Virus record (IMG/VR): IMGVR_UViG_3300010403_000705
Span: 310,001 to 374,000 of that record
Length of the DNA: 64,000 nucleotides
Strand: one strand, 5' to 3'
Shown: positions 2 through 35,717 of the stretch, in pieces
Layout of the letters: each line of letters starts with the position of its first letter
Position numbering within the stretch: position 1 is the first letter of the stretch
Notes under the pieces: model-generated
The model's input: the letters and a program-made list of their open reading frames with translations, nothing else
What the model was told of the DNA's origin: nothing
Databases searched by the model: none
Made by a program: the position numbers and the translations under genes

Positions 2-739
2 ATTGATCCAGAGGCTTTGATGTCAGATGAGGATGAGCATGTTGCTTTTGGCTGCATGCCATCTTTCAATGTGTATGGGTTGAAAGTAAATATGCCTCCT
101 GCACGTGAGGTGCCTTTTAGGTCTGCCGGCGGTCATATTCACTTCGGTACTAACCGACTGACGCATGCTCAAGCTGAACCAATGGTAAAAGCATTAGATG
201 CTATTCTGGGAGTAGCGTGCGTGTCTTTGTTCGCAGAGTTTGATGATCCTAATCGTCGAAAGCTGTATGGTCTTCCTGGAGAGTATCGATTGCCTCCGCA
301 TGGATTAGAGTATCGACCTCTGAGTAACGCTTGGTTGTCGCATCCTATGATTACTAATTTGGTAATCGACCTAGCTCGTAAGTGTGTAGTCTTTGGTCGT
401 AAGAATCTATTGTCTTCGTTTTGGAAGACAACAGAAGAGGAAACGATTGATACTATCATTCGATGCGATGTGGAAACATCGCATAAAATCTTAGAGCGTA
501 ACCGAGAAGTTCTCAAACAGCTTCTCAAAGCTTCCTATCAACGTGCTGGTGATAGTGATCTTGAGACATTATTTAATGTCTTCAAGAATGGTATCGGCTC
601 AGCTATCAAAAATCCTCGTGATTTCGAGACTAATTGGAAGTTCAAAACTGGGTGGATTGCACATTATGGCGGCGCGGGTGAGCCCAATGTTGCGACGTTT
701 ATGAGTAATCGTCGTCACAATCCCAAGTATCTTATGTGA
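2..739 (+). CDS. phiEco32-like COOH-NH2 ligase type 2, paralog 1 (5'-truncated by window edge)
   Basis: Motifs FGCMPSFN, RSAGGHIHFG, PGEYRLPPHGLEYRPLSNAWL; the frame is open back to position 2; highly similar to the next two ORFs. Confidence 0.85.
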   Translation: MDPEALMSDEDEHVAFGCMPSFNVYGLKVNMPPAREVPFRSAGGHIHFGTNRLTHAQAEPMVKALDAILGVACVSLFAEFDDPNRRKLYGLPGEYRLPPHGLEYRPLSNAWLSHPMITNLVIDLARKCVVFGRKNLLSSFWKTTEEETIDTIIRCDVETSHKILERNREVLKQLLKASYQRAGDSDLETLFNVFKNGIGSAIKNPRDFETNWKFKTGWIAHYGGAGEPNVATFMSNRRHNPKYLM

Positions 740-758
740 TCATTTGTATATATTTTGT

Positions 759-794
759 TTATGGGGAAGATTGGTTAACCAATCTTCCCCATAA
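759..794. terminator. Perfect 36-bp palindrome (hairpin) after ligase 1
   Basis: TTATGGGGAAGATTGGTT|AACCAATCTTCCCCATAA, intergenic, T-rich flanks. Confidence 0.7.
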
Positions 795-888
795 TATTTT
801 GTAATATAGCAATGCTTAGCTTACCCATCCTCACTGTATAAGCATCATGTAAGTACATAATGTAAGCCTTTGGTTAAAAGGATTCAAA

Positions 889-2256
889 ATGAAGATTAAA
901 ATTTCTGATTTGATTAGCACGGGACATTCTGCTGTTGTTCAACATAAGAGTGGATATATTGGTCCGACTTATTATTTGAAGCGAAATAGTAATGAACTTT
1001 CTCGCGATTTGTATGCTGATGGATATTTTTTACCGGATGAAAAGTTTATTATCGTCAATGCTTATAGGCAAGGCGAAGTAACGCATATGTCAGTGGCTAA
1101 TTCATATGATTTTAAAGTACGTGGATATTATGTACCTTATGATCAGGAATTTGATCTGTTAGAGAATGATGATCTTAGTTTTGCTTGGGACGAGGTTAGA
1201 AAATCTAATGTGTCAAGATATCTTCATCATGGATTTACTATTGGTTCTGATCCAGAGATTTTTGTTGAGGATCGAAATGGAAATATGATTCCTGCTTTCC
1301 TATTCCTTGGTTCTAAGGAAGAACCCAATCATACTGCGATAGGTGATCATTATGGTTCCGATGGTGGTCATCCTATGTACTGGGATGGTTTTCAAGCAGA
1401 GTTTACCACTCGTGCCGGACATTGCTTGGAGTATCATACAGACTCAGTAGCTGCTGGTATTAAAGGCGTCTATGATGCAGCTAGGAAAAAATTTCCAGAT
1501 GCACGTCTTAGCTGTCGTAATGTTTTTGATATCTCTAATGATATGCTACAAACTGCTAAAGAAGAGCATGTAGCTTTCGGATGTATGCCGAGCTTTAATG
1601 CTTATGGATTGCAGGTGAATATGCCTCCTGCTCGTGAGGTGTCTTTCAGATCTGCTGGCGGTCATATTCATTTTGGTCTAGGTAAAATTACCAATGACTC
1701 TGCTGTCAGTATTGTTAAAGCATTAGATATGATTGTCGGTGTATCCTGTGTTAGTCTTTTCGATAAATTTGATAATCGAAAAAGAAGAATGATGTATGGT
1801 CTTCCTGGAGAGTATCGATTGCCTCCGCATGGATTAGAGTATCGTACACTTTCCAATGCCTGGCTTATTCATCCTTTCATTATGAATCTGGTGATCGATA
1901 TTGCTAGAAAAGCTGTGGTATTGAGCCAACGTGGTTGGCTAGATCTGTGGGTAAGTGACGAAGAAGAAACGATTGATACTATTATGAGATGCGATGTTGA
2001 GCAAGCTCGTAAGTCTTTGGAAACAAATAAAAAGACATTTATCAATCTGCTTAGTGCTTCTTATATATGGGCTTCTCAAATAGATTTAAATATATTATAT
2101 AATATCTTTTTTAATGGTCTAAAGAGTGTCATTCATGATCCAAATGATTTTGTAGGAAATTGGAAAATCAATGGTGGGTGGTTTCGTTTAGCGAGGGCTG
2201 ATAAGTGTAATGTTAGTCGAAGCATGGAAGACCTTCGTATTGGCAATAAGTTATAG
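889..2256 (+). CDS. phiEco32-like COOH-NH2 ligase type 2, paralog 2
   Basis: FTIGSDPEIFV, DGFQAEF, GGHIHFG, GEYRLPPHGLEYRTLSNAWL; about 115-aa variable N-terminal domain. Confidence 0.85.
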   Translation: MKIKISDLISTGHSAVVQHKSGYIGPTYYLKRNSNELSRDLYADGYFLPDEKFIIVNAYRQGEVTHMSVANSYDFKVRGYYVPYDQEFDLLENDDLSFAWDEVRKSNVSRYLHHGFTIGSDPEIFVEDRNGNMIPAFLFLGSKEEPNHTAIGDHYGSDGGHPMYWDGFQAEFTTRAGHCLEYHTDSVAAGIKGVYDAARKKFPDARLSCRNVFDISNDMLQTAKEEHVAFGCMPSFNAYGLQVNMPPAREVSFRSAGGHIHFGLGKITNDSAVSIVKALDMIVGVSCVSLFDKFDNRKRRMMYGLPGEYRLPPHGLEYRTLSNAWLIHPFIMNLVIDIARKAVVLSQRGWLDLWVSDEEETIDTIMRCDVEQARKSLETNKKTFINLLSASYIWASQIDLNILYNIFFNGLKSVIHDPNDFVGNWKINGGWFRLARADKCNVSRSMEDLRIGNKL

Positions 2257-2329: not shown

Positions 2330-3742
2330 ATGAAGATTACTGATATTCGAAATAGTGGACGATCAATGGCGGTGAAAGTAGCGAAGCGTGATGTCTCTGC
2401 CAGATATTATTTGCGGCGAGATGGTACGCCCACTCAGGATGTACAGATTGAACCATATTCTTTTCCATCGGATGTGTTTGGTATTATTGCAACATACGAT
2501 CGTCATGATTATGTAATTGCAAGCATCATTGATTTCTGTAATTCCAGCCGAGCGCCGCGGAACTATTATATTCCACTGGATTTGGAGTTTACAGAGATTA
2601 CTGCTGACGATCCTTTGTACCAAAAATGGGTCACGTATCAAACGCAGCATCTAGAGATCATGTTGCCTCATGATTTCAGTATTGGTTCTGATCCAGAGAT
2701 TTTTGTTGAGGATAAGGATGGTACGCATATTCCAGCTTTCCTATTCCTTGGATCTAAGGAGGCGCCTGATCGTACTCCTTCTTGGGGAGGTTACGATAAT
2801 AATGGTGGATGCACTATGTATTGGGATGGCTTCCAGGCAGAATTCACAACCAAAGCTGGTGGTTGTTTAGAGTATCATACAGACTCAGTAGCGGCTGGAC
2901 TTCGTGGAGTATATGATGCTGCCCGTCAGAAGTTTCCTAATGCCAGACTTAGCTTGAAGAGTGTAGTAGATATTCCCCATAGCATGTTGGAAGAAGCTGA
3001 AGATCAGTATGTAGCTTTCGGATGTATGCCCAGCTTTAATGCTTATGGAATTAGAGTAAACATGCCTCCTGCACGTGAGGTGCCTTTTAGATCTGCAGGT
3101 GGTCATATTCATTTTGGGATTGGTAAGCTTACTCAAGAGCAAGCTACTCCCATCGTCAAGGCGCTGGATGCTATTCTGGGAGTAGCGTGCGTGTCTTTGT
3201 TTGCTAACTATGATAGTCGAAAACGTAGGCATCTGTATGGTCTTCCTGGAGAGTATCGATTGCCTCCGCATGGATTAGAGTATCGACCTCTGAGTAACGC
3301 TTGGTTGTGTCACCCTTTCATCATGAATCTGGTGATTGATGTGGCAAGAAAGGTACTTGTCCTTGGGCAAAAGGGTTTGCTGAATCTGTGGCAAGGAAAT
3401 GAAGAAGAAACCATTGACATCATGATTCGTTCAGATGTAGAAGGTGCTCGTGAATCCTTAAAAAGAAACAAGGAAATCTTCATCAAAATTCTGGAATCTT
3501 GCTATGTTATTTATAATCGTTGGGCAACTCCTCAGGACCTAGAAATGTTCTATGGTATTTTCCTCAATGGATTAGAAACTGCTATCGCAGATCCTAGCAA
3601 TTTTGTCAAGAATTGGTATCTGAATGGCACTTCACGTGATAACTATGATGATAATGGTAGGGCTTGGCGCAAGCAAGCCTCTGGTTTACACGCCAATGTA
3701 AAGCGTAGCATGGATACGCTTCGCGATGGTAAGAAGCTGTAA
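2330..3742 (+). CDS. phiEco32-like COOH-NH2 ligase type 2, paralog 3
   Basis: FSIGSDPEIFV, DGFQAEF, GGHIHFG, GEYRLPPHGLEYRPLSNAWL. Confidence 0.85.
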   Translation: MKITDIRNSGRSMAVKVAKRDVSARYYLRRDGTPTQDVQIEPYSFPSDVFGIIATYDRHDYVIASIIDFCNSSRAPRNYYIPLDLEFTEITADDPLYQKWVTYQTQHLEIMLPHDFSIGSDPEIFVEDKDGTHIPAFLFLGSKEAPDRTPSWGGYDNNGGCTMYWDGFQAEFTTKAGGCLEYHTDSVAAGLRGVYDAARQKFPNARLSLKSVVDIPHSMLEEAEDQYVAFGCMPSFNAYGIRVNMPPAREVPFRSAGGHIHFGIGKLTQEQATPIVKALDAILGVACVSLFANYDSRKRRHLYGLPGEYRLPPHGLEYRPLSNAWLCHPFIMNLVIDVARKVLVLGQKGLLNLWQGNEEETIDIMIRSDVEGARESLKRNKEIFIKILESCYVIYNRWATPQDLEMFYGIFLNGLETAIADPSNFVKNWYLNGTSRDNYDDNGRAWRKQASGLHANVKRSMDTLRDGKKL

Positions 3743-3749
3743 ATCGGTA

Positions 3750-3804: not shown

Positions 3805-4827
3805 ATGCTTTCACTCCTGTTTAAGGTAATAGTTATGACGATAAGACCCTGGATGCAGCAATCACAAGGTCAACAAAGATTAAGAATTGCTGAGCCTTCA
3901 CCAACTCCTAAACAAGAAGTTGATACTGAAAAAAGGTTTGCTGGTGATTGGAATAAGGATGATGAGAACGCAGACACACAACCTGGTATTGGAACAACTA
4001 TCATTAAACATTCACCTCAACAGGAGATGAGTAAAGTGTATACCCCCTATAGTTATAAACCTACGCCGTCAGAAACTTCAAACAAAATATTTGTTTATGG
4101 GACGTGCATGACAGGTTTTTCTTTGAATAAAGTAGTAGCTCGCGACGGTTATATTAGTCCGGCGACAACAACCGCTGTTTATCGTATGATTAATATGTAT
4201 GATGAATATCCCACTATTTTAACGGGTGGTCATACTCGTATCATAGGACAACTATATTATACCACTAGGCGAACTTTGGAATTTTTGGATTCGGTTATGG
4301 ATTGTCCGAGCTTACATCATCGTGATATTATCTCCTTAGAAGATGGAACGCGTGCACATGCCTACATTATCAATCGCTGGAAGACTCCTCTTCGAGAAGA
4401 AGAAATTTTATCAGGAGACTGGATTGAATGGAAGAAGAACTCTCGAACACGAGAGAAAGAAAGAAAAGAAAAATTCAAAGCATTGATGGCTCGTGGTAAA
4501 GCAGAAGCTAAAGCTCGCCAACAAGCTATGGCAGACGATGTTATGACTACTGCTAATGATACAAAACTTACCAGTGTAGTCAAACGCTGGGACCCTATTA
4601 GAGGCGAATTCACTTATTCATTGAATACCTCGGAATCTAAAGTGAGCCCGAATGTTAGTGATAAGAGCATCTCTTCTGTAAGAAATGTTCATATCTCTGA
4701 TATTCCATTATCGGATTTAAAAATCAAATTGATTAATGACGGTATTAATCCTGAAGATTTAGAAGAGCATGCCATACGAATTGCATGCATGTCACGCTAT
4801 GGCTTATGGTATCAGATTGAAGATTAG
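3805..4827 (+). CDS. Gamma-glutamylcyclotransferase (AIG2-like) domain protein with N- and C-terminal extensions
   Basis: IFVYGTCMTG...YPTI...IIGQLY...LEFLD...HHR...AHAY...SGDW; catalytic Glu position appears altered (LDSVM vs LDRVE); start may be 3835. Confidence 0.75.
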   Translation: MLSLLFKVIVMTIRPWMQQSQGQQRLRIAEPSPTPKQEVDTEKRFAGDWNKDDENADTQPGIGTTIIKHSPQQEMSKVYTPYSYKPTPSETSNKIFVYGTCMTGFSLNKVVARDGYISPATTTAVYRMINMYDEYPTILTGGHTRIIGQLYYTTRRTLEFLDSVMDCPSLHHRDIISLEDGTRAHAYIINRWKTPLREEEILSGDWIEWKKNSRTREKERKEKFKALMARGKAEAKARQQAMADDVMTTANDTKLTSVVKRWDPIRGEFTYSLNTSESKVSPNVSDKSISSVRNVHISDIPLSDLKIKLINDGINPEDLEEHAIRIACMSRYGLWYQIED

Positions 4828-4853: not shown

Positions 4854-5096
4854 ATGAAAAAGTATCGACAAGGGCGTGGGCAACGCCCTCTTGAAGTACC
4901 AGATCTTCCTTCTAAAGAAGAGTATGATTTGGCATACCAGATCAATTGGGGAACTAAATCATACCCATCTAAAAGACTTGGAAATATTGATAGAGATAGA
5001 TTATGGGTTGAAGTGATTAAGATTCATAATTCAAAATCTCTAGAAGATAGAAAATGGGTTAGTAGATTCCTTATTGGTTTAGGGTTTGCCCAATGA
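4854..5096 (+). CDS. Small hypothetical protein, RG-x-LP(S/T)xE family member 1
   Basis: N-terminus KKYRQGRGQRPLEVPDLPSKEE shared with the next two ORFs. Confidence 0.6.
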   Translation: MKKYRQGRGQRPLEVPDLPSKEEYDLAYQINWGTKSYPSKRLGNIDRDRLWVEVIKIHNSKSLEDRKWVSRFLIGLGFAQ

Positions 5097-5347: not shown

Positions 5348-5362
5348 TGAAGTTTGGATAAT

Positions 5363-5768: not shown

Positions 5769-5770
5769 TA

Positions 5771-16286: not shown

Positions 16287-16490
16287 TATGTAGTGATGAC
16301 TGTCCCTGCAAAGCATCTGGAGATCCGAATGCGTGGCAACATAGTAATGAAGGACATTGTTTTGAATGTTGTAATGACTGTCCTAATAAAGCCGTAATGA
16401 ATCCAGAGATATGTTCCAGGGGTAATATTTCTAATTGGCAACGTGATTGTAATTTTTATTATAAAGATGGATTATGGAAAAGGTATGGTT

Positions 16491-16859
16491 ATGATGAGTA
16501 AAATTTTTGTTTACGGATCTCTTCGACAAGGCGGAGGTTTACATGAATGCTTGGCTACTTCCAAATATCTGAATACCGTTCGTACTAAACCAGAGTATAA
16601 ACTTTATTCACTTGGAGCATTCCCCGGCTTAGTAGCTGGTGGAACTACAGCCGTGGTTGGAGAAGTTTACGATGTAACGCCAGAAGTGCTGGCTCGATTG
16701 GATCGAGTTGAAGGTCATCCTAATTTTTATTGTCGTACGACAATTATCTTACAAGATGATACGGAAGTACAAGCGTATTTACTTCCTAATAATATTCATT
16801 GGTCTAATAATCTGATTGATTCAGGTGACTGGATTGAGTTTTGTGGAGCACGAAGGTAA
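16491..16859 (+). CDS. Gamma-glutamylcyclotransferase (AIG2/YtfP-like)
   Basis: IFVYGSLRQG...FPGL...VVGEVY...LARLDRVEG...Y.R...SGDW. Confidence 0.88.
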   Translation: MMSKIFVYGSLRQGGGLHECLATSKYLNTVRTKPEYKLYSLGAFPGLVAGGTTAVVGEVYDVTPEVLARLDRVEGHPNFYCRTTIILQDDTEVQAYLLPNNIHWSNNLIDSGDWIEFCGARR

Positions 16860-17365: not shown

Positions 17366-18091
17366 ATGTGTGGTATTTCAGGATTTACAGGTGTAAAAAA
17401 TCTTAATACTCGTGTCAAGTTAATCAAAGGTTTTGGACCTAGTATTGATCGCAGGGGATATGCGGCTGCCGGATTCGTTACTTCTAATGAAGCGGGAGAG
17501 ATAACTTTTCAAAGAAAAGTTCTTGGTTGGACAAGAGCTGATGAAGAATTTATTCTAGCGGCTGCTTCTGGTGATATGTGTATGATGCATTCACGAGGTC
17601 CTTGGACCTCAGTAGACACTGATGCTCATCCGTTTCCTGTTTCTAGAGATGGAAAAATTGTATTGTGGGGCGCTCATAATGGAGAGCTTGATCAAGCATG
17701 GGAAAGTGCTCGTCATCATAATAGAGATATTACCGTTGATAGTATGGAACTTTTTGAATTGATCGCTGATGCTCAATATAATCAGCTAAATACCATGTAT
17801 GGTTGGGGAGTAGCTGAATGGGTAGAAGCTAGCTCGCCACGTCAAGTTAAATTAGCTTGTATTTCTGACTATGCGGATTTAGTAGCTGTGTCTTTGGTAG
17901 GTGGAGGTGCAGCGTGGGCTAGCACTATGGATATTCTTAAAATTGGTCTAACCAATGCTGGTTTATCAATTAAAGAACATTATCCAATTCTAGGAAATAC
18001 TGGACGCGTCTTTGTTGCAAATGAAGAGGGTATCTTTCCAACCGAAGATACGCGAGTCTATACAAAAAATCAAATGGCATTTTGGAAATAA
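17366..18091 (+). CDS. Class II (Ntn) glutamine amidotransferase, paralog A
   Basis: N-terminal MCGI, RRG, HSR, AHPF, AHNG, VDS. Confidence 0.8.
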   Translation: MCGISGFTGVKNLNTRVKLIKGFGPSIDRRGYAAAGFVTSNEAGEITFQRKVLGWTRADEEFILAAASGDMCMMHSRGPWTSVDTDAHPFPVSRDGKIVLWGAHNGELDQAWESARHHNRDITVDSMELFELIADAQYNQLNTMYGWGVAEWVEASSPRQVKLACISDYADLVAVSLVGGGAAWASTMDILKIGLTNAGLSIKEHYPILGNTGRVFVANEEGIFPTEDTRVYTKNQMAFWK

Positions 18092-23759: not shown

Positions 23760-24413
23760 ATGAGCGAATCTATAATAGATAGATGCCAACGACATACAAT
23801 TGCTGTACGCCATACTTTGCTTGGTAAGAACTGGTACAGTGCTTTGGAAGCCATGGAATTTGCGAAAGGATTTCATCAAGGCACCAGAAAAGACAGAATA
23901 ACTCCAGAGTTCTCTCATCAAATAGAGATAGCGGGATTTCTTTTAACGTTATCATCAGCTTTACTATTTCCAGAAGAAACCATTACGGTTTCGTTCTTAC
24001 ATGATTGTCCGGAGGATTACGATATAGGATTCGAAGAACTGGAATCTAAGTTTGGTGCTAAAGTATCTAACGCTACCAAACTACTTACTAAAACTCATCG
24101 AGGGCATAAGCGTAATCCGGATACATATTTCATTGATATGATAAGCGATCCGATTGCTTCTGTTGTTAAGGGAGCCGACAGAATCAATAATCAAAGCACT
24201 ATTGTTGGGGTGTTTTCTAGAGAGAAACAAAATTCTTATATAACAGAAACAGTCCAACAGATCATTCCTATGATCAAATCTGCTAGGAAGAGCTGTCCTA
24301 GGCAATTCAATGTATATCAAAATATTCTTTTTGTGCTGAGAAGCCAACTTGATATGATTCGTGCAATCCATGCCGCACAAGATTCAATGAAAGAAAATAA
24401 AAATGCCGACTAA
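23760..24413 (+). CDS. HD-domain hydrolase, RelA/SpoT-hydrolase (Mesh1/SAH)-like
   Basis: FA...H.G.RKD..TP...H, LHDCPED, LLTK, VKGADRINN. Confidence 0.8.
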   Translation: MSESIIDRCQRHTIAVRHTLLGKNWYSALEAMEFAKGFHQGTRKDRITPEFSHQIEIAGFLLTLSSALLFPEETITVSFLHDCPEDYDIGFEELESKFGAKVSNATKLLTKTHRGHKRNPDTYFIDMISDPIASVVKGADRINNQSTIVGVFSREKQNSYITETVQQIIPMIKSARKSCPRQFNVYQNILFVLRSQLDMIRAIHAAQDSMKENKNAD

Positions 24414-24882
24414 TGCAATTACAACATGTTTGAGGGAACTTCAAAAGTTACTTGGTGTTGAAAAGATCAAAATTACTTATGACTATGATGGTAGAAATTT
24501 TCCACAAAAACCAAATGAATGGTTGTACAATGAGGTTGTTTTGGAGCAAGGAAATCCAACTCCATTTACCCTTGTAAATGAAGAGGCTGGATTAATAATT
24601 GCTCGATGGAATTTACAAGAAATGCCTTCATGTTGTGGCATTGCTATCATGTCAGAGTTTTTTGTTAATCCAAGGAGCAGAAAAACTGGAGTTGGCAAAG
24701 AGATTAGTAAACTCATTCGTTTAATCGCGAAAAAAATGAATTATAGAATCTTATTAGGAACTGATGTAATTACTAATACGTATCATCAACAGTCTTTAAA
24801 AAGAGATAAGTTTAAGAGCTTACTAAAATTTCGCAATAGAAATACTGGTAATAGAATCAATATTTCTGCATCTGTACTTTGA
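24403..24882 (+). CDS. GNAT-fold acetyltransferase-like protein
   Basis: FFVNPRSRKTGVGK acetyl-CoA-binding motif A. Confidence 0.6.
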   Translation: MPTNAITTCLRELQKLLGVEKIKITYDYDGRNFPQKPNEWLYNEVVLEQGNPTPFTLVNEEAGLIIARWNLQEMPSCCGIAIMSEFFVNPRSRKTGVGKEISKLIRLIAKKMNYRILLGTDVITNTYHQQSLKRDKFKSLLKFRNRNTGNRINISASVL

Positions 24883-28645: not shown

Positions 28646-28675
28646 TGAATTAATGTGTATTAGTTAAGTTTATAG

Positions 28676-28748: not shown

Positions 28749-28850
28749 TAAATTAATTGATCAATTATTTTAGATGGATGTTCGTTTCATTCACTTGACG
28801 CCAAGAAAATTCAAAATTGATTCAAAATTAAACAGAAGGAATATTGTCTT

Positions 28851-29588
28851 ATGTTCAGAATTGTTCCATACAAGCGTACCAGTGAGTCAGCTAAATTAGT
28901 AGCTCAGAAAATGACCGAGTTAAGTGGAAGGCGTGTTGTTTCTGGAGAAGCAAGTTTAGATCATAGAAATATTTTATGGGGCAATTCAAGTGTACCGCTC
29001 GAAAATCTACAACCAGCAGCAGCTATTGGAATCGCCAAAAATAAGTTAAGCACCTTAGATAAATTAAAAAGTTCGAATGTTTCTATACCAGAATACACAA
29101 CTTCTAAATCTGTTGCTGAGGATTGGGTTCGCAATGGCATTGTTGTGGTAGCTCGCAAACTCTTAAATGGTTCAGAAGGTCGAGGCATTGTACTGTGTCG
29201 GCATCTTCCTTTAGAAGATGCACCTTTATATGTTAAACTAGTTGAGAAAGATAAAGAATTTAGAGTACACGTCTGTAACGGTGTTGCTATTGATTTGCAA
29301 GAGAAGAGACGAAAAAATGGCGCCCGAAACCCTGATGGCACCAGACCAGATGGAATTATTAGAAATATTGATAGCAACTGGGTATTTTGTCGAAACAATA
29401 TTGTTGAGCCACCTGGACTTCGTGTATTAGGTATAACGGCTGTTCAAGCACTTGGATTATTGTTTGGTGCTGTTGATGTAGTGCATAATACTAGAAATGG
29501 TAGTTTGCATGTACTAGAAATTAACACTGCGCCTGGACTATGTGATTCTACTGCGACCAAATATGCTCAGGCGTTTTTAAACCTTTGA
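28851..29588 (+). CDS. ATP-grasp ligase (RimK-like, phiEco32 type)
   Basis: AKNKL, GSEGRGI, KEFRVHV, IRN, FGAVDV, LEINTAPGL. Confidence 0.85.
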   Translation: MFRIVPYKRTSESAKLVAQKMTELSGRRVVSGEASLDHRNILWGNSSVPLENLQPAAAIGIAKNKLSTLDKLKSSNVSIPEYTTSKSVAEDWVRNGIVVVARKLLNGSEGRGIVLCRHLPLEDAPLYVKLVEKDKEFRVHVCNGVAIDLQEKRRKNGARNPDGTRPDGIIRNIDSNWVFCRNNIVEPPGLRVLGITAVQALGLLFGAVDVVHNTRNGSLHVLEINTAPGLCDSTATKYAQAFLNL

Positions 29589-29604
29589 TTGATGGATATG
29601 TTTT

Positions 29605-31686
29605 ATGGATGAAGAAGAGAATGATTTAGTAAATGACGCAGAGCCAGTACAACCCATCGAACCACTAGATGTAGGAGCGGATGTTCCAGTAATAGCTCCA
29701 GTGCCAATACCACCACCACCACCTCTTCCTCAACCTCGTCCTGTTCCTTTTATTAATAATTATGAAAGGATTAGACCACAAGCGATTTGGATGGAAGATG
29801 AACCCCGTAATGACTACTGGGAATATGAAAACCAACAGGCTCGTGAGGAGGATTTTAGGGTAAGGTTGCAACGTTATAGACAGGTCGCCGCCGCCGGCGT
29901 CGCGCCGTGGCTTAATAGAGATTGGGAAATTTGGTCGCAACAGAACGTGGGCGCAGCTCACCCAGTACCTAATCCTCATATTCCGGTGCCCAGAAACCCA
30001 AATATAAATCAATTTATAAACCAAATTATTAATAATGAGGAAATAAGAGAGCGTCACATGAATTATGATCAGTTGGTAAGAAGATATCCATCATTGGTAG
30101 ACAGGTATCTTCCTGATTTATCCAATAAGGCTAATGCTTTGAGTGCATTACGAAGTATTGAATCTGATAGAAATGCAACTCTAGAAGAGAAAACGGCACT
30201 TCGTGATTATGTAGGCAATCACGAAGTAGCATCTGTTTATAACTATCAGTGGTGTGTTGACTGCGAATCAATGGTAGGGCATCCTAATCATACACATTGT
30301 CCACATTGTATTTATCCATGTACTGTTGTTGAGCCGGGTCATGTTAATCCTCCATCCAATACTCAGTTAGCAGTATGTGGATTTTGTGGAGAATGTTGTC
30401 GTAGTAAAGGTCATAGATACTGTCCTACTTGCAATACTCACAGTGATAGATTATGTCGACATTGCAGTAAATGTACTGCTTGCTGTGCTTGTCAACTTTG
30501 TCCCGCACGAGGTTGTCAAGAGATGCAAGAATGTAATGATTGTTGTAATTGTCTCGATCATTGTACCTGTCCAGCACTACAATCTAATGGTACATATGGT
30601 AAATCTTTTCCAGCTTTCAAAAAGAAAGAGCGTCGACTGTTTGATTGCCAACGTCTAGCTGGTGTAGAGTGGGAGTACAATCGATTATCTACACAAAGAT
30701 ATTTCGACCATTGGGTAAAGAAGTGGTTAGCGGATCGGCACCAAGATGATTCATGCGGTTATGAAGCCGTTACAGCTCCCATCGCTGGCGACTACATGGT
30801 CAAATGTATAGAGGCTTTGGGAAAAGTTTTTGAAAAGAGTAAGGCGTCAATTGATAATCGATGTTCAATTCATGTACATGCAGATGCAAAAGACCTTCAG
30901 TGGTCAGATATGTTCAGACTGTTGAAAGTCTATTCGATTGTAGAACCTGTTCTTTATATGTTAGCAGGGCAAGAACGCCTCGATAATAGATATTGTGTGC
31001 CCTGTGGTAAAGATTATGCTGCTGCTCTTGAAAGGATTGATCGTAAAGATGCAGTCATGGCTGTAGCATTTACTCCCATTACACGTGATGGAAGAAAAAG
31101 TGAAGTCAATCTTATTCCTGATAATGGTCGCAATTCACAGCGTGCCAAACCAGGAAAACGTGCCGATAATCATGCGTATTGTCGACGCAAAGGATTGAAC
31201 ATTCTTCCTTGGTTGGCTGGTCGAGGACCTCGACCAAACACTCCAGTTAGCATCGTAACTCAAGCCAATGATACAATTGAAAAAATTGCGCAACGCAATA
31301 ATGTTTCAATTGCGGCATTGATGCGTTGGAATAAGATTAAACCTGGTACGCGTTTTGCGGCTGGACAAAGACTTATCGTCAATAAGCGTATTGTGGCACC
31401 TGATACTACAGTGGAGTTTAGAATTCACCCTAACACACATGATGCTAATCGTGTTATTAATTGGGTGAAAGTTATACTGCGTTTGGTTGATTGGGCAGCT
31501 AAATCAACTGATAACGATTTAGAGAAACTTCCTAAGTCAGCCCTTAGGATTCTCTGTCAAGTCATTGCACCCGAATGTGCTCCTTGGATCATGTCGAGAG
31601 TGCAAGAGTGGCGTAAGGAAACATCAAAAATCAATGGACGTCACGAGCGTCGCATTAGCCTAAAGGGCGGAAAGTACAGTTACTAA
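29605..31686 (+). CDS. Putative amidoligase (Amidoligase_2/GCS-like) with Pro-rich N-terminus, Cys-rich region and inserted LysM domain
   Basis: GVEWE, DDSCGYEAVTAP, CSIHVH, TVEFR; LysM-like TQANDTIEKIAQRNNVSIAALMRWNKI...GQRLIV; many CxxC. Confidence 0.8.
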   Translation: MDEEENDLVNDAEPVQPIEPLDVGADVPVIAPVPIPPPPPLPQPRPVPFINNYERIRPQAIWMEDEPRNDYWEYENQQAREEDFRVRLQRYRQVAAAGVAPWLNRDWEIWSQQNVGAAHPVPNPHIPVPRNPNINQFINQIINNEEIRERHMNYDQLVRRYPSLVDRYLPDLSNKANALSALRSIESDRNATLEEKTALRDYVGNHEVASVYNYQWCVDCESMVGHPNHTHCPHCIYPCTVVEPGHVNPPSNTQLAVCGFCGECCRSKGHRYCPTCNTHSDRLCRHCSKCTACCACQLCPARGCQEMQECNDCCNCLDHCTCPALQSNGTYGKSFPAFKKKERRLFDCQRLAGVEWEYNRLSTQRYFDHWVKKWLADRHQDDSCGYEAVTAPIAGDYMVKCIEALGKVFEKSKASIDNRCSIHVHADAKDLQWSDMFRLLKVYSIVEPVLYMLAGQERLDNRYCVPCGKDYAAALERIDRKDAVMAVAFTPITRDGRKSEVNLIPDNGRNSQRAKPGKRADNHAYCRRKGLNILPWLAGRGPRPNTPVSIVTQANDTIEKIAQRNNVSIAALMRWNKIKPGTRFAAGQRLIVNKRIVAPDTTVEFRIHPNTHDANRVINWVKVILRLVDWAAKSTDNDLEKLPKSALRILCQVIAPECAPWIMSRVQEWRKETSKINGRHERRISLKGGKYSY

Positions 31687-31687
31687 T

Positions 31688-32674
31688 ATGTGTGGACTGA
31701 GTGGTTTTATTGGATTGCCGTTATCTAAAGATGAAAAGCTGATGCTTGTTTTAGGTCTCGGCGATGGCATCGACAATCGTGGTGGACATAGTTGTGGATA
31801 TGTCAGCGTTGCTGAGGATGGTAATCTTCAGTATGCCAGAAAAAAAGGCACATGGATTCGTGCTCGTATTAGATTTACTGAGGGCGCTGCTTCTGAAGTA
31901 TGTATGATGCATGCTCGTTGGGCAACTTGTGGTAATAAAGAGGATCCAATGAATGCGCATCCGTTTTCTATTCGACGTAATGGACGTGTAGTTATGTGGG
32001 GCGCACATAACGGTATGGTTCCTGATGCTTTTAAGAGTGCTAAGGCACATGGTCGCGATATCAATGTAGATTCTCAAGAAATTTTTGAGCTTCTTGCTGA
32101 TAAGAATTACGAAGGCATTCGAGAGATGTCTGGCTATGGTGTGATTACTTGGATTGATACTGATCATCGTGATTATGTTAATCTCGCCAGGCTTTCATCT
32201 CATTCCGATATTTGCGTAGTCAGTGTCAAGGGTGGTGGTGTAGTCTGGGCATCTACTTGGAAAATTCTTAAGGAAGCTCTTAAGTTAGCTGATCTAGAAG
32301 TGGATCGTGAGTTTAAGATTGACGAAATCGGTCGAGTATATCGTATTCGAGCTGATGGTGTCTTCAAAACCAAACTAGATGGTATCAAAGTTGGAACCTA
32401 TAATAAGTTGACCAAAACACAAACCACCGTTGGTTCTACGACAACTGTAGATACACCTTCAGTGCCATCTGACGAGATAGATGAAACACTTATTGTAGAA
32501 ACAAAAGTGCCAGGAGAATCAGAATATAAATATGCTTCCTCTTATGGTACTGGAGCCTCTTCAACTGTTACGAATGGCTCTGGAGTTTATTCCCCTGCCT
32601 TTTCTGCATGGCAAGGCAAGCAAGGCAATGTAGATGATGAAGAAGCGTATCGTCAATGGTGTGGGTCTGAATAA
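31688..32674 (+). CDS. Class II (Ntn) glutamine amidotransferase, paralog B
   Basis: MCGL, NRGGHS.G, HARWAT.G, NAHPF, AHNG, VDS. Confidence 0.85.
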   Translation: MCGLSGFIGLPLSKDEKLMLVLGLGDGIDNRGGHSCGYVSVAEDGNLQYARKKGTWIRARIRFTEGAASEVCMMHARWATCGNKEDPMNAHPFSIRRNGRVVMWGAHNGMVPDAFKSAKAHGRDINVDSQEIFELLADKNYEGIREMSGYGVITWIDTDHRDYVNLARLSSHSDICVVSVKGGGVVWASTWKILKEALKLADLEVDREFKIDEIGRVYRIRADGVFKTKLDGIKVGTYNKLTKTQTTVGSTTTVDTPSVPSDEIDETLIVETKVPGESEYKYASSYGTGASSTVTNGSGVYSPAFSAWQGKQGNVDDEEAYRQWCGSE

Positions 32675-32680
32675 ATAATG

Positions 32681-32726
32681 CATCTTTATCAGAAGCCTGG
32701 GATATCCCAGGCTTCTGATAAAGATG
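32681..32726. terminator. Perfect 46-bp palindrome
   Basis: CATCTTTATCAGAAGCCTGGGAT|ATCCCAGGCTTCTGATAAAGATG; no U-tract. Confidence 0.6.
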
Positions 32727-34337
32727 AGAAACTATTATGATTATAGTAACTAAGAATTCTACCTACGAGTTTGATAGTGAAAATTCACGTTATCGTAAGA
32801 TAAAACCGGAGTGTGGCGAGTGGAAGGTTTATTATGGTTTTGCTTCGGAATTAAAAAATGGTGTAAAAGCCAAAATAGTAAGAGATGATAACAGAACTAC
32901 TATAACTTCTATTATTTGTGAAATTCAAGAAGACGATGAAGATGAAGTCTAGAAATTATAGAAAAGAATCGCCGGGCTTGAAGAAAGGGGAGTTTCTAGA
33001 AAAGAAACGTAGCTACCAAAGACGTACCAAGATATATACAAATATTAATTCAGCTTGTAAAGATGCTATGGAAAATGGCAAAGCTGAATTGATAATTGAC
33101 AATAAAAAATTTTGTTTGACTGATCATCCTTACAAGAACTATTCTAATTTTTACGCTTTTGTTCGCATGACAGGTTTTGGAATAGTTTTAGCAGAAGTGT
33201 GTGAAAAAGATTCTGGGTGGATGAGAATCGTATATCCTCATTGTAAAAGAACAACTAATACTATTAGCGGTATTAATTCTTTTATCTGGGATAACATAGC
33301 TGCCTATGTTAGTGATTTTGATGTCCTGTCAGAAAGTTCGGATTCTATAATGAGAACCTTCGAAAAACAGATAAAAGAAGAGTTTGTATAATCTGGCAGA
33401 TATGTTGTAGTAGGCTTCAATTAAATATAAGCATGTTTTAATTTATATGGTAGCTAATATTGAAAGAAAAACAACTTGCTTACATGCAGATGTTTTTAAA
33501 AATTTTCGTTGGGAAAGTCAAAAATTTTCTGATCGATTCAATACTGAGTATGAGTATTGTGATTGTAGGATTTGTAAAAATTCTATCTATACTGGACTAT
33601 GCCGTATAGTAGATGTAGTTTCTGAAGATAATCTGAATTGGGATATCCCAAGTGCAAAGGAACAGAATATGAGTAAAGACAAATTATCGGTCTCTAGAAG
33701 TTTAAAAAGTCGTCATGCCAAAGAAGGTAATGGTATGAGTCTAAAAGAGTTTGCGCGTCGACTTGTTCGTGAGGATAATGAATCCGCCAAGGATTGGTTT
33801 GCTAACAAGGCGGGTTTGCTAAACGCAGAACGTTCTGATAAAAATAAAACACGTGTTTCTTCAGAGAAATCAGCCACCAAACTTGCCAAACGTAGTAAAA
33901 AGAAAGGCAGTAGCAATGTCTCTGTTGCCGCCGCAACACCTGCTATTACCAAATCTGCTAAGACAAAATAATCTTAAACAAAGGAATGAAACATAATGAT
34001 GTATTTTCAAAGTGACAAAGTAGTATATAGAGGAACGAAGTTTCCCGAACTGCGAACAAAACTCGGCGAAGTGTGCACGCGTGTAAGCGGAAGTGAACAT
34101 GGGGTGGTGGTAGATTTTGGCGATGATTCTTATGTTATGGACAGTCGTAACCTAGCTCCTTATCTACCGTCTAAAGAACCTAATGCCAAGGAACCTGAAA
34201 TTCAAATTCGACGCAAACGAATTGATTTAGAGCAGGAATAATAGCTTTATAATTGGTGGGAGGGACTACTTCCCTCCCATCGCATAATCATATAATTATA
34301 TATTAAGTATTTTCAAGAAATTAAAGGAATTTTTAAA

Positions 34338-35717
34338 ATGATGACTGCACGTGAGCTAGTGGGTAATTGGCTTAAAAATCAACGTAATATTGGCGTTCGT
34401 TTAGAAGACAAAAGAAACCTCATTGAAGATGTTATTATCATTACTTCTATGAGTGATTACGGTAAGAATGAAATTTATTTTGTAGGAACATACGCCAACA
34501 CCTCTGGCTGTTCTGGTTATCTTAAAGATATTGATTCGGTTTCTATCTTAGAAGGTGAAGAACTTACTAAACTGTTCTCTCTTTATGAGAAGAAACAAGT
34601 TGAGAATTTGCATTCTCAACTTTCGCATTCTGGATATGTTGGTGTATTGTCAGAATTCTTTGTAGAAGATGAAGATGGTGCATGTATTCCTTCATCTGCT
34701 TTTCTAGCTACACGTCCTTCGTCTAGCAGTAAATCATGGTATGATTCAAAAGTTGATTCACACCAAAACGGAGTTGCTGGAGAAATTCAAACAACCTATA
34801 ATTCTTGTTTAGCCATTACTATTGATTCCTTGGCTTATGGATTGAAACATTTGTCAGATTCTGCTAAGAAACTATCTAGCAAAGCTAAAGTATCTGCTAA
34901 GTCTGTTATGCCAATTTCCGATGCGATTATGCAAGCGTCTACTGATAAAATGCCTACTTTGGGTAATGCAACTGTCAGTAACGCTTACGGATTGAAACTT
35001 AATGCGCCGGATCCACGTACTGTTCCATTTCGTTGTGCGCAGTCTGCTTTACAGTTTCAGTTGTATGGTTTTAATAATCTTACTGAAGAACGAGGTAAAT
35101 CGATCGTGATGACACTGGATGCAACACTAGGAGTTGCGTGTGTGTCTTTGCTTGCGGGAATTAATCATCCAGATCGAGTTAAGCTGGGTGGTCTTCCAGG
35201 TGATTATAGGATAGTCACTTCTGCTTTAGAATATTTTTCTCTCGGAAATTCATGGATGATTCATCCTATGATTGCTAATTTGGTTTTTGATTTTGCTCGT
35301 AAATGCGCAATTCTTGGTCATAAGAATCTAGGCAAATATTGGTCGGCTTCGAAAGAAGATGTTATTTCTTGCATGATGGATTTGGATGTAGATAAAGCTC
35401 ATGCCATCATGGATCGAAATAAGGATATTATGATGAAAATTTTCCAAGCCGCTTGGCCAATTTGTAATGGTTCTAATGCGGCTGGTGTGCCCAATTTATC
35501 TAATGAAATTAAACCAGATAAAGCTAGGGATGTAATGTATGATATTTTCTATAATGGTATCACTACAGTAATTGATAATCCCACAGACATGTCTGCTAAC
35601 TGGACTTTAGATGGTACATGGATTGCTCACTCAGAAGGTGATAATAAAAATGTATGGCGTACTCTCAATGCACTATACGGTACACGCAAGTTTCCTAATC
35701 AAGTAGTACATGGTTGA
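34338..35717 (+). CDS. Degenerate COOH-NH2 ligase type 2 paralog (likely catalytically altered)
   Basis: Collinear with paralogs (EFFVEDEDG, VPFR, LDATLGVACVSL, GLPGDYR, W.IHPMI.NLV.D.ARK), but GSDPE is GVLSE, GGHIH is QSALQ and LEYR is LEYF. Confidence 0.75.
   Translation: MMTARELVGNWLKNQRNIGVRLEDKRNLIEDVIIITSMSDYGKNEIYFVGTYANTSGCSGYLKDIDSVSILEGEELTKLFSLYEKKQVENLHSQLSHSGYVGVLSEFFVEDEDGACIPSSAFLATRPSSSSKSWYDSKVDSHQNGVAGEIQTTYNSCLAITIDSLAYGLKHLSDSAKKLSSKAKVSAKSVMPISDAIMQASTDKMPTLGNATVSNAYGLKLNAPDPRTVPFRCAQSALQFQLYGFNNLTEERGKSIVMTLDATLGVACVSLLAGINHPDRVKLGGLPGDYRIVTSALEYFSLGNSWMIHPMIANLVFDFARKCAILGHKNLGKYWSASKEDVISCMMDLDVDKAHAIMDRNKDIMMKIFQAAWPICNGSNAAGVPNLSNEIKPDKARDVMYDIFYNGITTVIDNPTDMSANWTLDGTWIAHSEGDNKNVWRTLNALYGTRKFPNQVVHG

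What the first reader, a model, noticed from the sequence alone, without database searches (positions are those of the whole stretch)
2..35717. Greatly expanded phiEco32-type amide/peptide ligation toolkit
Seen: 4 COOH-NH2 ligase type 2 genes, an ATP-grasp + amidoligase + GATase-II operon (28851-32674), a second GATase-II (17366), two GGCTs (3805, 16491) and a GNAT (24403). Established: a single-copy version of this gene set was described in phiEco32-like phages and predicted to build or modify peptides such as cell-wall cross-links; its product is unknown as far as I know. Inference: the duplication points to a multi-substrate glutamyl/amide modification pathway with writers (ligases, GATases) and erasers (GGCT), perhaps remodelling host peptidoglycan for superinfection exclusion or tagging proteins.
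Basis: partly seen in the sequence, partly recalled or inferred. Interest (0 to 1): 0.75.

Follow-up and report, generated by a model that had tools for sequence, protein, structure and literature searches.

The report
Expanded amide-ligase gene kit in megaphage
A roughly 440-kb soil megaphage carries an enlarged, evolutionarily conserved version of a phage enzyme set that makes and cuts glutamyl-type amide bonds; the genes are real and mostly look active, but what they modify is still unknown.

Summary
The window is bases 310001-374000 of a 432,844-bp soil virus record. It encodes four paralogs of the phiEco32-type COOH-NH2 ligase: three in tandem and one 30 kb away. It also encodes an ATP-grasp / Amidoligase_2+LysM / Ntn-GATase operon, a second GATase paralog, two GGACT genes and a GNAT-family gene. 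Every copy of these families in the genome lies within about 36.5 kb.

Two other complete megaphages (452 and 447 kb) and several metagenomic contigs keep the same order, so this is a clade trait. Ordinary phages carry one copy of each family in a compact cassette.

New details:
- The ligases are a "long form" with a divergent N-terminal domain and a C-terminal helical extension around a GS/GCS2/PafA-like core.
- The fourth ligase is a conserved, catalytically degenerate paralog (HxH, DPE and the final Arg are lost).
- The long GGACT has a degenerate active-site motif.
- LysM is an insertion found only in this clade's amidoligase.
- A conserved 71-aa protein with an acidic tail follows the operon.

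The function is unresolved. I favour one ATP-driven glutamyl/peptide amide-bond pathway acting on a peptide-like target. Peptidoglycan remodelling, protein tagging and small-amine metabolism remain open; DNA hypermodification is disfavoured. This is a new variant of a known but uncharacterised kit, of moderate interest.

The parts
1..739 (+). lig1: 3' part of a long-form COOH-NH2 ligase type 2. The full gene is genome 309174-310739 (521 aa) and starts 826 nt before the window.
   Evidence: PF14395 at 51.6 bits; genome search; catalytic motifs intact; falls in the lig1 clade with the G001 and G002 orthologs.
889..2256 (+). lig2: long-form COOH-NH2 ligase type 2, 455 aa.
   Evidence: PF14395 at 57 bits; phrog_3815 E 2.3e-36; AF2 model with pLDDT 92; GS / YbdK / PafA-Dop fold, Z about 15.
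2330..3742 (+). lig3: long-form COOH-NH2 ligase type 2, 470 aa. It is the extra lig2-type copy that G001 and G002 lack.
   Evidence: PF14395 at 46.2 bits; 54% identical to lig2; inside the lig2 clade.
3805..4827 (+). GGACT_L: 340-aa protein with a GGACT/AIG2 domain (residues 95-207), a Lys/Glu-rich linker and a small C-terminal domain. Its active-site motifs are degenerate.
   Evidence: PF06094 at 51.9 bits. It sits next to the tandem ligases in G001, G002 and L032. Motif alignment.
16443..16859 (+). GGACT_S: short canonical gamma-glutamyl(amine) cyclotransferase. The true start is probably the ATG near 16485.
   Evidence: PF06094 at 85.1 bits. YGSL and LDxxEG motifs kept. Nearest solved structures are YtfP and human GGACT.
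17366..18091 (+). GAT_a: stand-alone class-II (Ntn) glutamine-amidotransferase-like domain, 241 aa.
   Evidence: 40% identical to GAT_b, E 2e-51. Starts Met-Cys-Gly and keeps the HNG and VDS motifs. Conserved in G001 and G002 next to GGACT_S.
24403..24882 (+). GNAT-family protein (family A7/X5, with PGCCG and R-x-x-G-x-G motifs).
   Evidence: Acetyltransf_4 E 0.0014, below the cut-off. Family-level GNAT support. The same family abuts long-form ligases in other phages, with 3 copies in G001 and 2 in G002.
28851..29588 (+). RimK-like ATP-grasp ligase, 245 aa.
   Evidence: phrog_2599 E 3.6e-56. Profile against PDB hits RimK at E 6e-12. Invariant R102, E136, R138, K152, D209, E223, N225. 72% identical in G001.
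29605..31686 (+). Amidoligase_2, 693 aa. It has a Pro-rich disordered N-terminus, a Cys-rich zinc-ribbon-like array (about residues 212-325), a GS-fold core, and a LysM domain inserted at 553-592.
   Evidence: PF12224 at 46.4 bits and LysM at 34.2 bits. Invariant EWE, HVH, E447, R527 and EFR. Model pLDDT 80; weak GS/YbdK/Dop hits. LysM occurs only in the closest relatives.
31688..32674 (+). GAT_b: class-II (Ntn) GATase-like domain plus a Ser/Thr-rich tail, 328 aa. It starts 1 nt after the amidoligase stop codon.
   Evidence: GATase_6 at 37 bits; phrog_14519 E 6.6e-17; Met-Cys-Gly start.
32737..32952 (+). Conserved 71-aa protein with an acidic C-terminal tail. It is a candidate partner or substrate, unproven.
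   Evidence: Orthologs sit at the same position in G001, G002, L113 and L114, each with a run of 4-7 Asp/Glu at the end. The complex prediction with the ATP-grasp gave no answer.
34338..35717 (+). lig4: conserved, catalytically degenerate paralog of the COOH-NH2 ligase (a pseudo-ligase), 459 aa.
   Evidence: BLASTP paralog with no Pfam hit. DPE, GC.PS, GGHxHF and the Arg of EYR are lost in all four orthologs aligned (G000, G001, L113, L114); these carry their own conserved insert. G002's copy joins the clade by HMM and in the tree (99% support).

Best explanation
This is a clade-conserved, expanded and dispersed version of the known phage 'amidoligase kit'. I read it as one ATP-driven pathway that builds and trims glutamyl-type amide (isopeptide or peptide) bonds on a peptide-like target, either a protein tail or a peptidoglycan-precursor stem peptide.

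Proposed steps:
- Each ligase (the RimK-like ATP-grasp, three intact GS-fold long-form COOH-NH2 ligases, and the GS-fold Amidoligase_2) activates a carboxylate as an acyl-phosphate and joins it to an amine.
- The amidoligase and the GATase that starts 1 nt after it act as a pair. The GATase is either a two-component amidotransferase partner (Gln-derived NH3) or a gamma-glutamyl hydrolase.
- GGACT_S and GAT_a remove or recycle gamma-glutamyl groups, releasing 5-oxoproline or Glu.
- The three active tandem ligases share a conserved core but have divergent N-terminal domains. These give different substrate or partner specificities.
- The fourth paralog is catalytically dead but under selection. 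It most likely serves as a non-catalytic subunit or adaptor.

Shown here: family and fold assignments, motif integrity or loss, clustering, synteny and copy numbers.
Inferred: the chemistry, that the dispersed genes cooperate, and the kind of target.
For: - Families and folds. All close structural relatives of the ligase make or break gamma-glutamyl amides (GS, GCL/YbdK, gamma-glutamylmethylamide synthetase, 1-naphthylamine GS, PafA/Dop).
- Functional linkage: in ordinary phages the same five families form one compact cassette. Examples are phi14:2 and PA11 and most of the 80 IMG/VR loci. The cassette often also holds a Peptidase_C26 gamma-glutamyl hydrolase.
- In this genome every copy lies in 36.5 kb, and the order is the same in G001 and G002.
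- Active-site residues are intact in lig1-3, the amidoligase, the ATP-grasp, both GATases and GGACT_S.
- Divergence among the ligase paralogs is concentrated in the N-terminal domain.
- The pseudo-ligase clade is conserved across five phages.
- Accessory targeting-type modules on the amidoligase point to a macromolecular target: LysM here, pentapeptide repeats in more distant relatives.
- A conserved small protein with an acidic tail ends the operon. Small Zn-ribbon proteins with acidic tails abut the ATP-grasp in at least 15 canonical cassettes.
Against: - There is no biochemical or expression data at all. The sample is a soil DNA metagenome.
- Here the kit genes are separated by unrelated genes (RNA ligase, HD, NTPase, phosphoesterase), so they may be three independent modules.
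- The complex prediction between the ATP-grasp and the 71-aa protein gave no support (by the tool's own statement this is not evidence against).
- All close fold relatives other than PafA/Dop act on small molecules.
- GGACT_L is degenerate, so the 'eraser' next to the tandem ligases may not be catalytic.
- LysM is restricted to this clade.
Confidence: 0.5

Rival explanations
1. Peptidoglycan or Lipid II remodelling. The amidoligase-GATase pair amidates or extends a stem-peptide carboxylate on the cytoplasmic precursor. This would be analogous to MurT/GatD. It would change the wall so as to block superinfection or tune lysis.
For: - A LysM domain (a peptidoglycan/GlcNAc-binding module) is inserted in the amidoligase of this clade.
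- The ligase and GATase are adjacent, 1 nt apart.
- This is the original 2009 prediction, as quoted in PMC10580990.
- D-Ala-D-Ala ligases are among the ATP-grasp's relatives.
Against: - LysM is absent from most homologs, which carry pentapeptide repeats or no extra domain.
- I read no signal peptide in the acidic, Pro-rich N-terminus printed (not tested with a predictor); this stretch is modelled as disordered.
- No Mur-ligase or Fem-type genes were noticed in the region.
- The host and its wall type are unknown.
Confidence: 0.2
2. Protein tagging or tail glutamylation. The RimK-like ATP-grasp and the GS-fold ligases add Glu or a peptide to the acidic C-terminal tail of the conserved 71-aa phage protein, or to host ribosomal protein S6. 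This would resemble RimK-RpsF, Pup-PafA/Dop or LysW-LysX. The Ntn and GGACT enzymes would reverse or edit the modification.
For: - The nearest solved relative of the ATP-grasp is RimK.
- The best structural matches of the ligase include Dop and PafA, Z about 15.
- A conserved protein with an acidic tail follows the operon in five phages.
- Zn-ribbon proteins with acidic tails abut the ATP-grasp in at least 15 canonical cassettes.
- An archaeal-virus map lists LysW, a CAT ligase, GGCT, an ATP-grasp and a stand-alone glutaminase together.
Against: - The last residues of the tail are not conserved; there is no fixed terminal Glu or Gln.
- There is no sequence match to LysW or Pup.
- The complex prediction gave no support.
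- A strong hairpin separates the small ORF from the operon.
- Z scores for PafA/Dop are only marginally above those for YbdK and GS.
Confidence: 0.2
3. Small-molecule gamma-glutamyl metabolism. The ligases gamma-glutamylate free amines, polyamines or amino acids, and the hydrolases and cyclotransferases remove the group. Precedents are the Puu pathway, EgtA/EgtC and butirosin BtrJ/BtrG. The system would make or detoxify a metabolite useful to the phage.
For: - Fold relatives are mostly small-molecule gamma-glutamyl ligases.
- Canonical cassettes add a Peptidase_C26 of the PuuD type.
- Three different classes of gamma-glutamyl-cleaving enzyme accompany the ligases.
Against: - The amidoligase carries macromolecule-binding modules, LysM or pentapeptide repeats.
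- The long-form ligases have extra N- and C-terminal domains, and a conserved pseudo-enzyme paralog exists. Both suggest protein complexes or large substrates.
- No transporter or other pathway genes were recognised nearby.
Confidence: 0.2
4. Nucleic-acid hypermodification. The kit decorates a modified DNA or RNA base with glutamyl or amino groups.
For: - In compact phages the cassette sits inside the replication / nucleotide-metabolism module, for example next to ThyX, primase and UDG in phi14:2 and next to primase/helicase in PA11.
- Here it sits among RNA-repair genes.
Against: - The genome has no ThyA-like pyrimidine hydroxymethylase and no TGT/DpdA; it has an ordinary ThyX.
- No aGPT-Pplase or kinase type genes were recognised in the window.
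- No paper found links this kit to DNA modification.
Confidence: 0.06

Closest known systems
Canonical phage amidoligase cassette (phiEco32 type; seen here in Pseudomonas phage PA11 and Cellulophaga phage phi14:2)
   Same: It has the same five families: RimK-like ATP-grasp, COOH-NH2 ligase type 2, Amidoligase_2, class-II GATase and GGCT. Its function is likewise unknown.
   Different: - The canonical kit has one copy of each family in one 5-7-kb operon, with ligases of 250-330 aa. It often also has a Peptidase_C26 and a conserved ~208-aa unknown protein, both absent here.
- Here there are 3 active ligases plus 1 dead one, all of the long form (455-521 aa).
- Here there are 2 GATases, 2 GGACTs and a LysM insert.
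- Here the genes are spread over 36.5 kb.
RimK / ribosomal protein S6 polyglutamylation
   Same: RimK is the closest solved relative of the ATP-grasp (E 6e-12). A protein with an acidic tail is encoded nearby.
   Different: No RimA/RimB partners are present. The target is unknown. The Pfam RimK match is below its cut-off.
Pup ligase PafA / depupylase Dop
   Same: They are the top structural matches of the ligase model (Z 14.8-15.0 over residues 104-444). They also provide a precedent for paralogs with different roles acting on a small protein tag through a C-terminal Glu.
   Different: Sequence identity is about 13%. There is no Pup-like GGQ/GGE terminus. Dop keeps its active site, whereas lig4 has lost its own.
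MurT/GatD Lipid II amidotransferase
   Same: The logic is an ATP-dependent carboxylate-activating enzyme paired with a glutaminase. A LysM domain hints at a peptidoglycan ligand.
   Different: The folds are unrelated: Mur-ligase plus class-I GATase versus GS-fold plus class-II Ntn. The resemblance rests on general knowledge and was not tested here.
Gamma-glutamyl protect/deprotect pathways (PuuA/PuuD, EgtA/EgtC, BtrJ/BtrG)
   Same: Each pairs one of the ligase classes found here with one of the gamma-glutamyl-cleaving classes found here (C26, Ntn-GATase or GGCT).
   Different: Those pathways act on small molecules and have additional tailoring enzymes that were not recognised here. This is an analogy from general knowledge.

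Membership tests
Phage phiEco32-like COOH-NH2 ligase type 2 (PF14395) | Profile match above the curated cut-off (25 bits) | tested here: met
   lig1 51.6, lig2 57.0 and lig3 46.2 bits. lig4 has no Pfam hit; it has only phrog_3815 at E 5e-7 and BLASTP paralogy.
Phage phiEco32-like COOH-NH2 ligase type 2 (PF14395) | Glutamine-synthetase / GCS2-like carboxylate-amine ligase fold | tested here: met
   AF2 model with pLDDT 92. Foldseek hits GS and YbdK at probability 1.0. VIA-align gives Z 13-15 to Dop, PafA, YbdK, GCL and GS.
Phage phiEco32-like COOH-NH2 ligase type 2 (PF14395) | Conserved catalytic motif set (G-x-DPE, QAE, GC.PS, GGHxHF, RR, G-EYR) | tested here: met
   Intact in lig1-3 and in the canonical short forms. 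NOT met in lig4 or its aligned orthologs (G001, L113, L114): DPE becomes xxE, the HxH is lost, and EYR becomes EY(F/Y/H).
Phage phiEco32-like COOH-NH2 ligase type 2 (PF14395) | ATP-dependent carboxylate-amine ligase activity | not testable with these tools
   Needs enzyme assays.
Amidoligase_2 (PF12224) | Profile match above the cut-off, conserved GS-type acidic/His/Arg residues, and a neighbouring GATase-like thiol peptidase | tested here: met
   46.4 bits against a cut-off of 22. Invariant E355, E357, H423, H425, E447, R527, E604 and R606. GAT_b starts 1 nt after its stop codon.
RimK-type ATP-grasp | Profile membership and ATP-grasp Mg/ATP-binding residues | tested here: inconclusive
   Pfam RimK at 16.1 bits is below the cut-off of 21. 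Against that, phrog_2599 gives E 3.6e-56, the profile hits RimK structures at E 6e-12, and K152, D209, E223 and N225 are invariant. Acting on S6 was not testable.
Class-II (Ntn) glutamine amidotransferase | N-terminal nucleophile Cys directly after the initiator Met; GATase_6 profile | tested here: met
   Both proteins start Met-Cys-Gly. GAT_b scores 37 bits against a cut-off of 27. GAT_a has no Pfam hit but is 40% identical to GAT_b.
Class-II (Ntn) glutamine amidotransferase | Fused acceptor (synthase) domain that uses the ammonia | tested here: not met
   GAT_a is the Ntn domain alone. GAT_b adds only a low-complexity tail. The canonical cassette GATases also show no recognised synthase domain.
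GGACT / AIG2-like gamma-glutamyl cyclotransferase (PF06094) | Profile above the cut-off plus the YGSL motif and the catalytic Glu (LDxxEG) | tested here: met
   GGACT_S scores 85.1 bits with both motifs kept. GGACT_L passes the profile (51.9 bits), but its motifs are degenerate across four orthologs, so catalysis there is inconclusive.
GNAT acetyltransferase | Profile above the cut-off; motif A (R/Q-x-x-G-x-G/A) | tested here: inconclusive
   The window protein scores 19.1 bits against a cut-off of 24.3. Its family shows motif A. Four of 12 members hit Acetyltransf_1 (best E 4.9e-7), and only GNATs appear among the weak PDB hits.
LysW/LysX amino-group carrier system (considered) | Small Zn-ribbon carrier with a conserved C-terminal Glu next to a RimK-family ligase | tested here: not met
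   The window's 71-aa protein has no CxxC pairs and a variable terminus. The Zn-ribbon family from canonical cassettes shows no sequence match to LysW. LysX is not among the ATP-grasp's PDB hits.
Known phage DNA hypermodification routes (considered) | ThyA-like pyrimidine hydroxymethylase, or DpdA/TGT, present in the genome | tested here: not met
   PF00303 and PF01702 gave no match in the 433-kb record. An ordinary ThyX is present.

The most novel reading that the evidence does not exclude
The kit is a phage-encoded, carrier- or tag-protein-based system. The conserved small protein with the acidic tail would be glutamylated or peptide-extended by the RimK-like ATP-grasp and the GS-fold ligases, with the pseudo-ligase acting as adaptor. 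The product would be either a polyanionic protein (for example a nucleic-acid mimic used against host defences) or a Pup/LysW-like conjugate. The Ntn and GGACT enzymes would edit or recycle it. That would be a new kind of post-translational tagging system in viruses. It would also finally assign a function to a cassette present in hundreds of phages.
Probability: 0.12. Interest if true: 0.8.

Novelty: new variant of a known kind. Interest (0 to 1): 0.5.

Why it matters
The phiEco32-type amidoligase cassette is found in hundreds of phages: Pseudomonas, Escherichia, Vibrio, crAss-like, marine and archaeal viruses. In the literature held here it has had no assigned function since its prediction in 2009.

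The megaphage version offers several experimental handles that the compact cassettes lack:
- separable paralogs that differ in their N-terminal domains;
- a natural catalytically dead paralog;
- a LysM insertion that suggests a ligand;
- a conserved candidate partner with an acidic tail.

If the target turns out to be the cell wall, a host protein or a phage tag protein, that would reveal a widespread host-takeover or anti-defence chemistry.

Tried and rejected
- Megablast of the region against 50,697 phage records found no near relative.
- Stop-codon recoding was considered because of a CUA-anticodon tRNA. ORF coverage does not improve with any stop codon read as sense, so the standard code was kept.
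- I considered that the ligase N-terminal domain is the GS N-domain, which would imply GS-like ring hetero-oligomers. VIA-align matches cover only residues ~101-445 and only the C-domain of GS, so this was dropped.
- The LysW-like carrier idea has no sequence support.
- The ATP-grasp + 71-aa protein complex prediction scored 0.00, 'no answer'.
- PHROGs and Pfam on ten other conserved unknown ORFs of the module gave nothing informative.
- A Protein Atlas search on the 71-aa protein found only unnamed viral clusters.
- Searches for DNA-modification enzymes were negative.
- The paper by Iyer et al. 2009 could not be read because it is not held. Its prediction is cited second-hand from PMC10580990 and PMC11706807.
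- The careful ML tree did not finish in time. Only the quick tree is used.

Full report
**Where the window lies.** The window is bases 310001-374000 (+ strand) of a 432,844-bp IMG/VR virus record. The record has about 33% GC, and almost all genes are on one strand. It carries 39 tRNAs and a tmRNA. It comes from a soil metagenome. The standard genetic code fits. No phage in GenBank is close at the DNA level.

**Checking the observation.** Pfam places three ORFs (2-739, 889-2256, 2330-3742) in COOH-NH2_lig above the cut-off.
- The first ORF is the 3' part of a 521-aa gene that begins upstream of the window.
- The fourth claimed ligase (34338-35717) has no Pfam hit. It is still a clear paralog of the other three: 31-35% identity, E down to 1e-72, and a weak hit to the PHROG for this family.
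- The operon 28851-32674 encodes an ATP-grasp, which is weak in Pfam but has phrog_2599 E 3.6e-56 and, as a profile, RimK structures at E 6e-12. It also encodes an Amidoligase_2 with a LysM domain, and a GATase_6 protein.
- The second GATase (17366-18091) escapes Pfam but is 40% identical to the first. Both begin Met-Cys-Gly, the hallmark of Ntn amidotransferases.
- Both GGACT assignments pass the cut-off.
- The GNAT call is below the cut-off for the window protein but holds at family level.
- The ORF at 5354-5752 shares only a C-terminal segment with the long GGACT protein, not the GGACT domain.

**More than chance.**
- The four ligases are the largest paralog family in the genome.
- Every copy of every kit family lies between genome positions 309174 and 345717, which is 8.4% of the record.
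- Among 309 GenBank phage records with a homolog there are only 311 matching places, so one copy is the rule.
- I built HMMs for the five families and scanned 80 IMG/VR loci plus reference phages. The usual picture is one short ligase (250-330 aa), one amidoligase, one GATase and one ATP-grasp in a 5-7-kb cassette, with or without a GGACT. Examples are Pseudomonas phage PA11 and the crAss-like Cellulophaga phage phi14:2.
- These cassettes often add a Peptidase_C26 gamma-glutamyl hydrolase and a conserved ~208-aa unknown protein. Neither is present here.

**A clade trait.** Two complete relatives keep the same gene order over about 38 kb: IMGVR_UViG_3300035661_000001 (451,956 bp, direct terminal repeats) and IMGVR_UViG_3300036715_004471 (446,541 bp). 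The order is:

tandem ligases, long GGACT, GNAT(s)..., short GGACT, GAT_a..., ATP-grasp, amidoligase+LysM, GAT_b, small acidic protein..., fourth ligase.

- Partial contigs from other samples show the same pieces.
- The two relatives have 2+1 ligases; this genome has 3+1.
- A quick ML tree (the careful search did not finish) gives three old paralog lines: lig1 (98% support), lig2 (96%) and lig4 (99%). All sit inside a long-form clade (100%) that is separate from the canonical short ligases.
- lig2 and lig3 of this genome both fall in the lig2 line, so the extra copy is a later duplication, or was lost in the relatives.

**Anatomy of the ligases.**
- An AF2 model of lig2 has pLDDT 92. It shows a beta-rich N-terminal domain (residues 1-95), a core and a helical C-terminal extension.
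- Foldseek and VIA-align place residues ~101-445 with carboxylate-amine ligases: Dop and PafA (Z 14.8-15.0), YbdK/GCS2 (14.9), glutamate-cysteine ligases, glutamine synthetases, gamma-glutamylmethylamide synthetase and 1-naphthylamine GS.
- The N-terminal domain is not matched. My idea that it equals the GS N-domain is therefore dropped.
- An alignment of 25 family members shows nearly invariant motifs: G-x-DPE, QAE, GC.PS, GGHxHF, RR and G-EYR.
- lig1-3 keep all of these. lig4 and its aligned orthologs in three other phages lack the Asp-Pro of DPE, the GC.PS motif, both His of HxH and the Arg of EYR. They share their own conserved insert and C-terminus. G002's copy was placed with them by HMM and in the tree.
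- From the established roles of the equivalent His residues in glutamine synthetase (metal n2 and nucleotide binding; general knowledge), lig4 is most likely inactive as a ligase. It is nonetheless under purifying selection.
- A further degenerate paralog, with a different pattern of losses, sits on a 145-kb contig (L032 3708-5054).
- Between the active paralogs the core is 66-73% identical, the N-terminal domain only 10-27%.

**Other kit members.**
- The amidoligase keeps the GS-type EWE, HVH, E, R and EFR residues.
- Its LysM domain lies between two conserved core blocks and is therefore an insertion. It is present only in the closest relatives (58-81% identity). More distant homologs carry pentapeptide repeats or nothing.
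- Its N-terminal half is a disordered Pro-rich stretch followed by an array of Cys pairs.
- The ATP-grasp keeps the invariant Lys, Asp, Glu and Asn residues.
- The GATases have the nucleophile Cys and the HNG and VDS motifs, but no acceptor domain. The GATases of canonical cassettes also show no recognisable synthase domain.
- GGACT_S keeps YGSL and LDxxEG. In GGACT_L these motifs vary among four orthologs, so its catalysis is doubtful.
- The GNAT family (PGCCG plus R-x-x-G-x-G) directly abuts long-form ligases in other phages. It is present in three copies in one relative and two in the other.

**A candidate partner.**
- Directly after GAT_b, behind a 20-bp-stem hairpin, lies a 71-aa ORF. It is conserved in all five relatives examined and always ends in a run of 4-7 Asp/Glu followed by 0-3 variable residues.
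- In at least 15 canonical cassettes the ATP-grasp is followed, often abutting it, by a ~70-aa protein with two CxxC pairs and an acidic tail.
- This recalls RimK-S6, LysX-LysW and PafA-Pup. However, I found no sequence link to LysW or Pup.
- A complex prediction between the ATP-grasp and the 71-aa protein gave 'no answer'.
- An archaeal-virus preprint lists LysW, a carboxylate-amine ligase, GGCT, an ATP-grasp and a stand-alone glutaminase in one genome map, without interpretation.

**What it most likely does.** All the enzyme families either make amide bonds from an ATP-activated carboxylate or cleave gamma-glutamyl amides. They form one operon in ordinary phages. So I treat the dispersed genes here as one system for glutamyl/peptide amide-bond writing and trimming (confidence about 0.5).
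- The accessory binding modules on the amidoligase, the extra domains on the ligases and the conserved pseudo-enzyme lean towards a macromolecular, peptide-like target.
- Peptidoglycan precursors (LysM hint), a protein tail (RimK and PafA/Dop likeness, acidic-tail protein) and free amines (most fold relatives, C26 peptidase) each remain at roughly 0.2.
- DNA hypermodification is disfavoured. The genome has ThyX but no ThyA-like hydroxymethylase and no DpdA/TGT.

**Literature.** Full-text searches found only genome-annotation mentions and the second-hand 2009 prediction (cell-wall modification to prevent superinfection, or secondary-metabolite synthesis). No experiments were found. The jumbo-phage overview PMC7824862 does not describe this expansion.

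**Verdict.** This is a new variant of a known, uncharacterised phage system, shared by a clade of soil megaphages. Interest is moderate (0.5).

Noticed in passing
window 4854-5096, 5093-5347, 5363-5752: Three tandem small ORFs directly after the long GGACT gene share an N-terminal motif (M-K/R-K-x-R/K-x-x-R-G-x-x-x-L-E-V...P-S/T-K/R-E). The third also shares a ~40-aa segment with the C-terminus of the long GGACT protein (BLASTP E 6e-6).
   Followed up: partly
window 32681-32726: A perfect 20-bp-stem inverted repeat lies between GAT_b and the 71-aa ORF. No T-run follows on the + strand. It may be an RNA-stabilising or processing hairpin, or an operon boundary.
   Followed up: no
window 28675-28749 and 63523-63607; genome 58637-58710: There are two tRNA-Leu(UAA) genes in the window, one just upstream of the ATP-grasp. 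The genome has 39 tRNAs, a tmRNA and a tRNA with a CUA anticodon (it would read UAG). ORF coverage gives no sign of stop-codon recoding.
   Followed up: partly
window 11842-12519, 15351-16286, 22675-23664, 23760-24413, 35771-36295, 39769-40761, 44419-45324, 53022-54557, 56745-57947: The kit is embedded in an auxiliary region with RNA-repair and nucleotide/cofactor genes. In coordinate order these are an NTPase_I-T, a metallophosphoesterase, an Rnl-type RNA ligase, an HD_4 domain protein, a peptide deformylase, a PRPP synthetase, a radical SAM protein, RtcB and a cytidylyltransferase-like protein.
   Followed up: partly
genome 240000-300000 (upstream of the window) and the kit genes: Composition is uneven. 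The stretch at 240-300 kb has 38-45% GC with many small ORFs, against about 30% elsewhere. The kit genes have 37-43% GC against 32.7% for the genome.
   Followed up: no
whole record (G000): IMG/VR labels the record 'provirus'. However, the same protein is on a 447,666-bp contig, and the two syntenic relatives are 446.5 kb and 452 kb (the latter with direct terminal repeats). The record is therefore probably a near-complete free megaphage genome that was trimmed by the provirus caller.
   Followed up: partly
L031 432-1052 and 3990-4538; loci L059-L112: Canonical cassettes contain two further conserved genes. One is a Peptidase_C26 / class-I GATase-like gamma-glutamyl hydrolase (36 loci). The other is an unannotated ~208-aa protein lying between the ligase and the amidoligase (35 loci). 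Both are absent from the megaphage.
   Followed up: partly
L064 13496-13711 and 14 other loci (alignment A4): A ~70-aa protein with two CxxC pairs and a strongly acidic tail follows the ATP-grasp, and often abuts it, in many canonical cassettes. It has no match in Pfam or PDB.
   Followed up: partly
window 9630-10397 and 10437-11093: An adjacent paralog pair (30% identity) of unknown function, conserved as a pair in the 452-kb relative. No Pfam or PHROG match.
   Followed up: no
L038, L043-L047, L051, L052: In a group of ~40-125-kb phage contigs the position of the amidoligase (directly upstream of GATase and ATP-grasp) is taken by a second, distinct ~500-aa PF14395 ligase subfamily (motifs GADPEF and HGYEYR).
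   Followed up: no
L113 12122-12658 (- strand): In one relative, an HNH endonuclease gene (weak Pfam hit) is inserted between the amidoligase and the GATase. This splits a gene pair that is otherwise only 1 nt apart.
   Followed up: no
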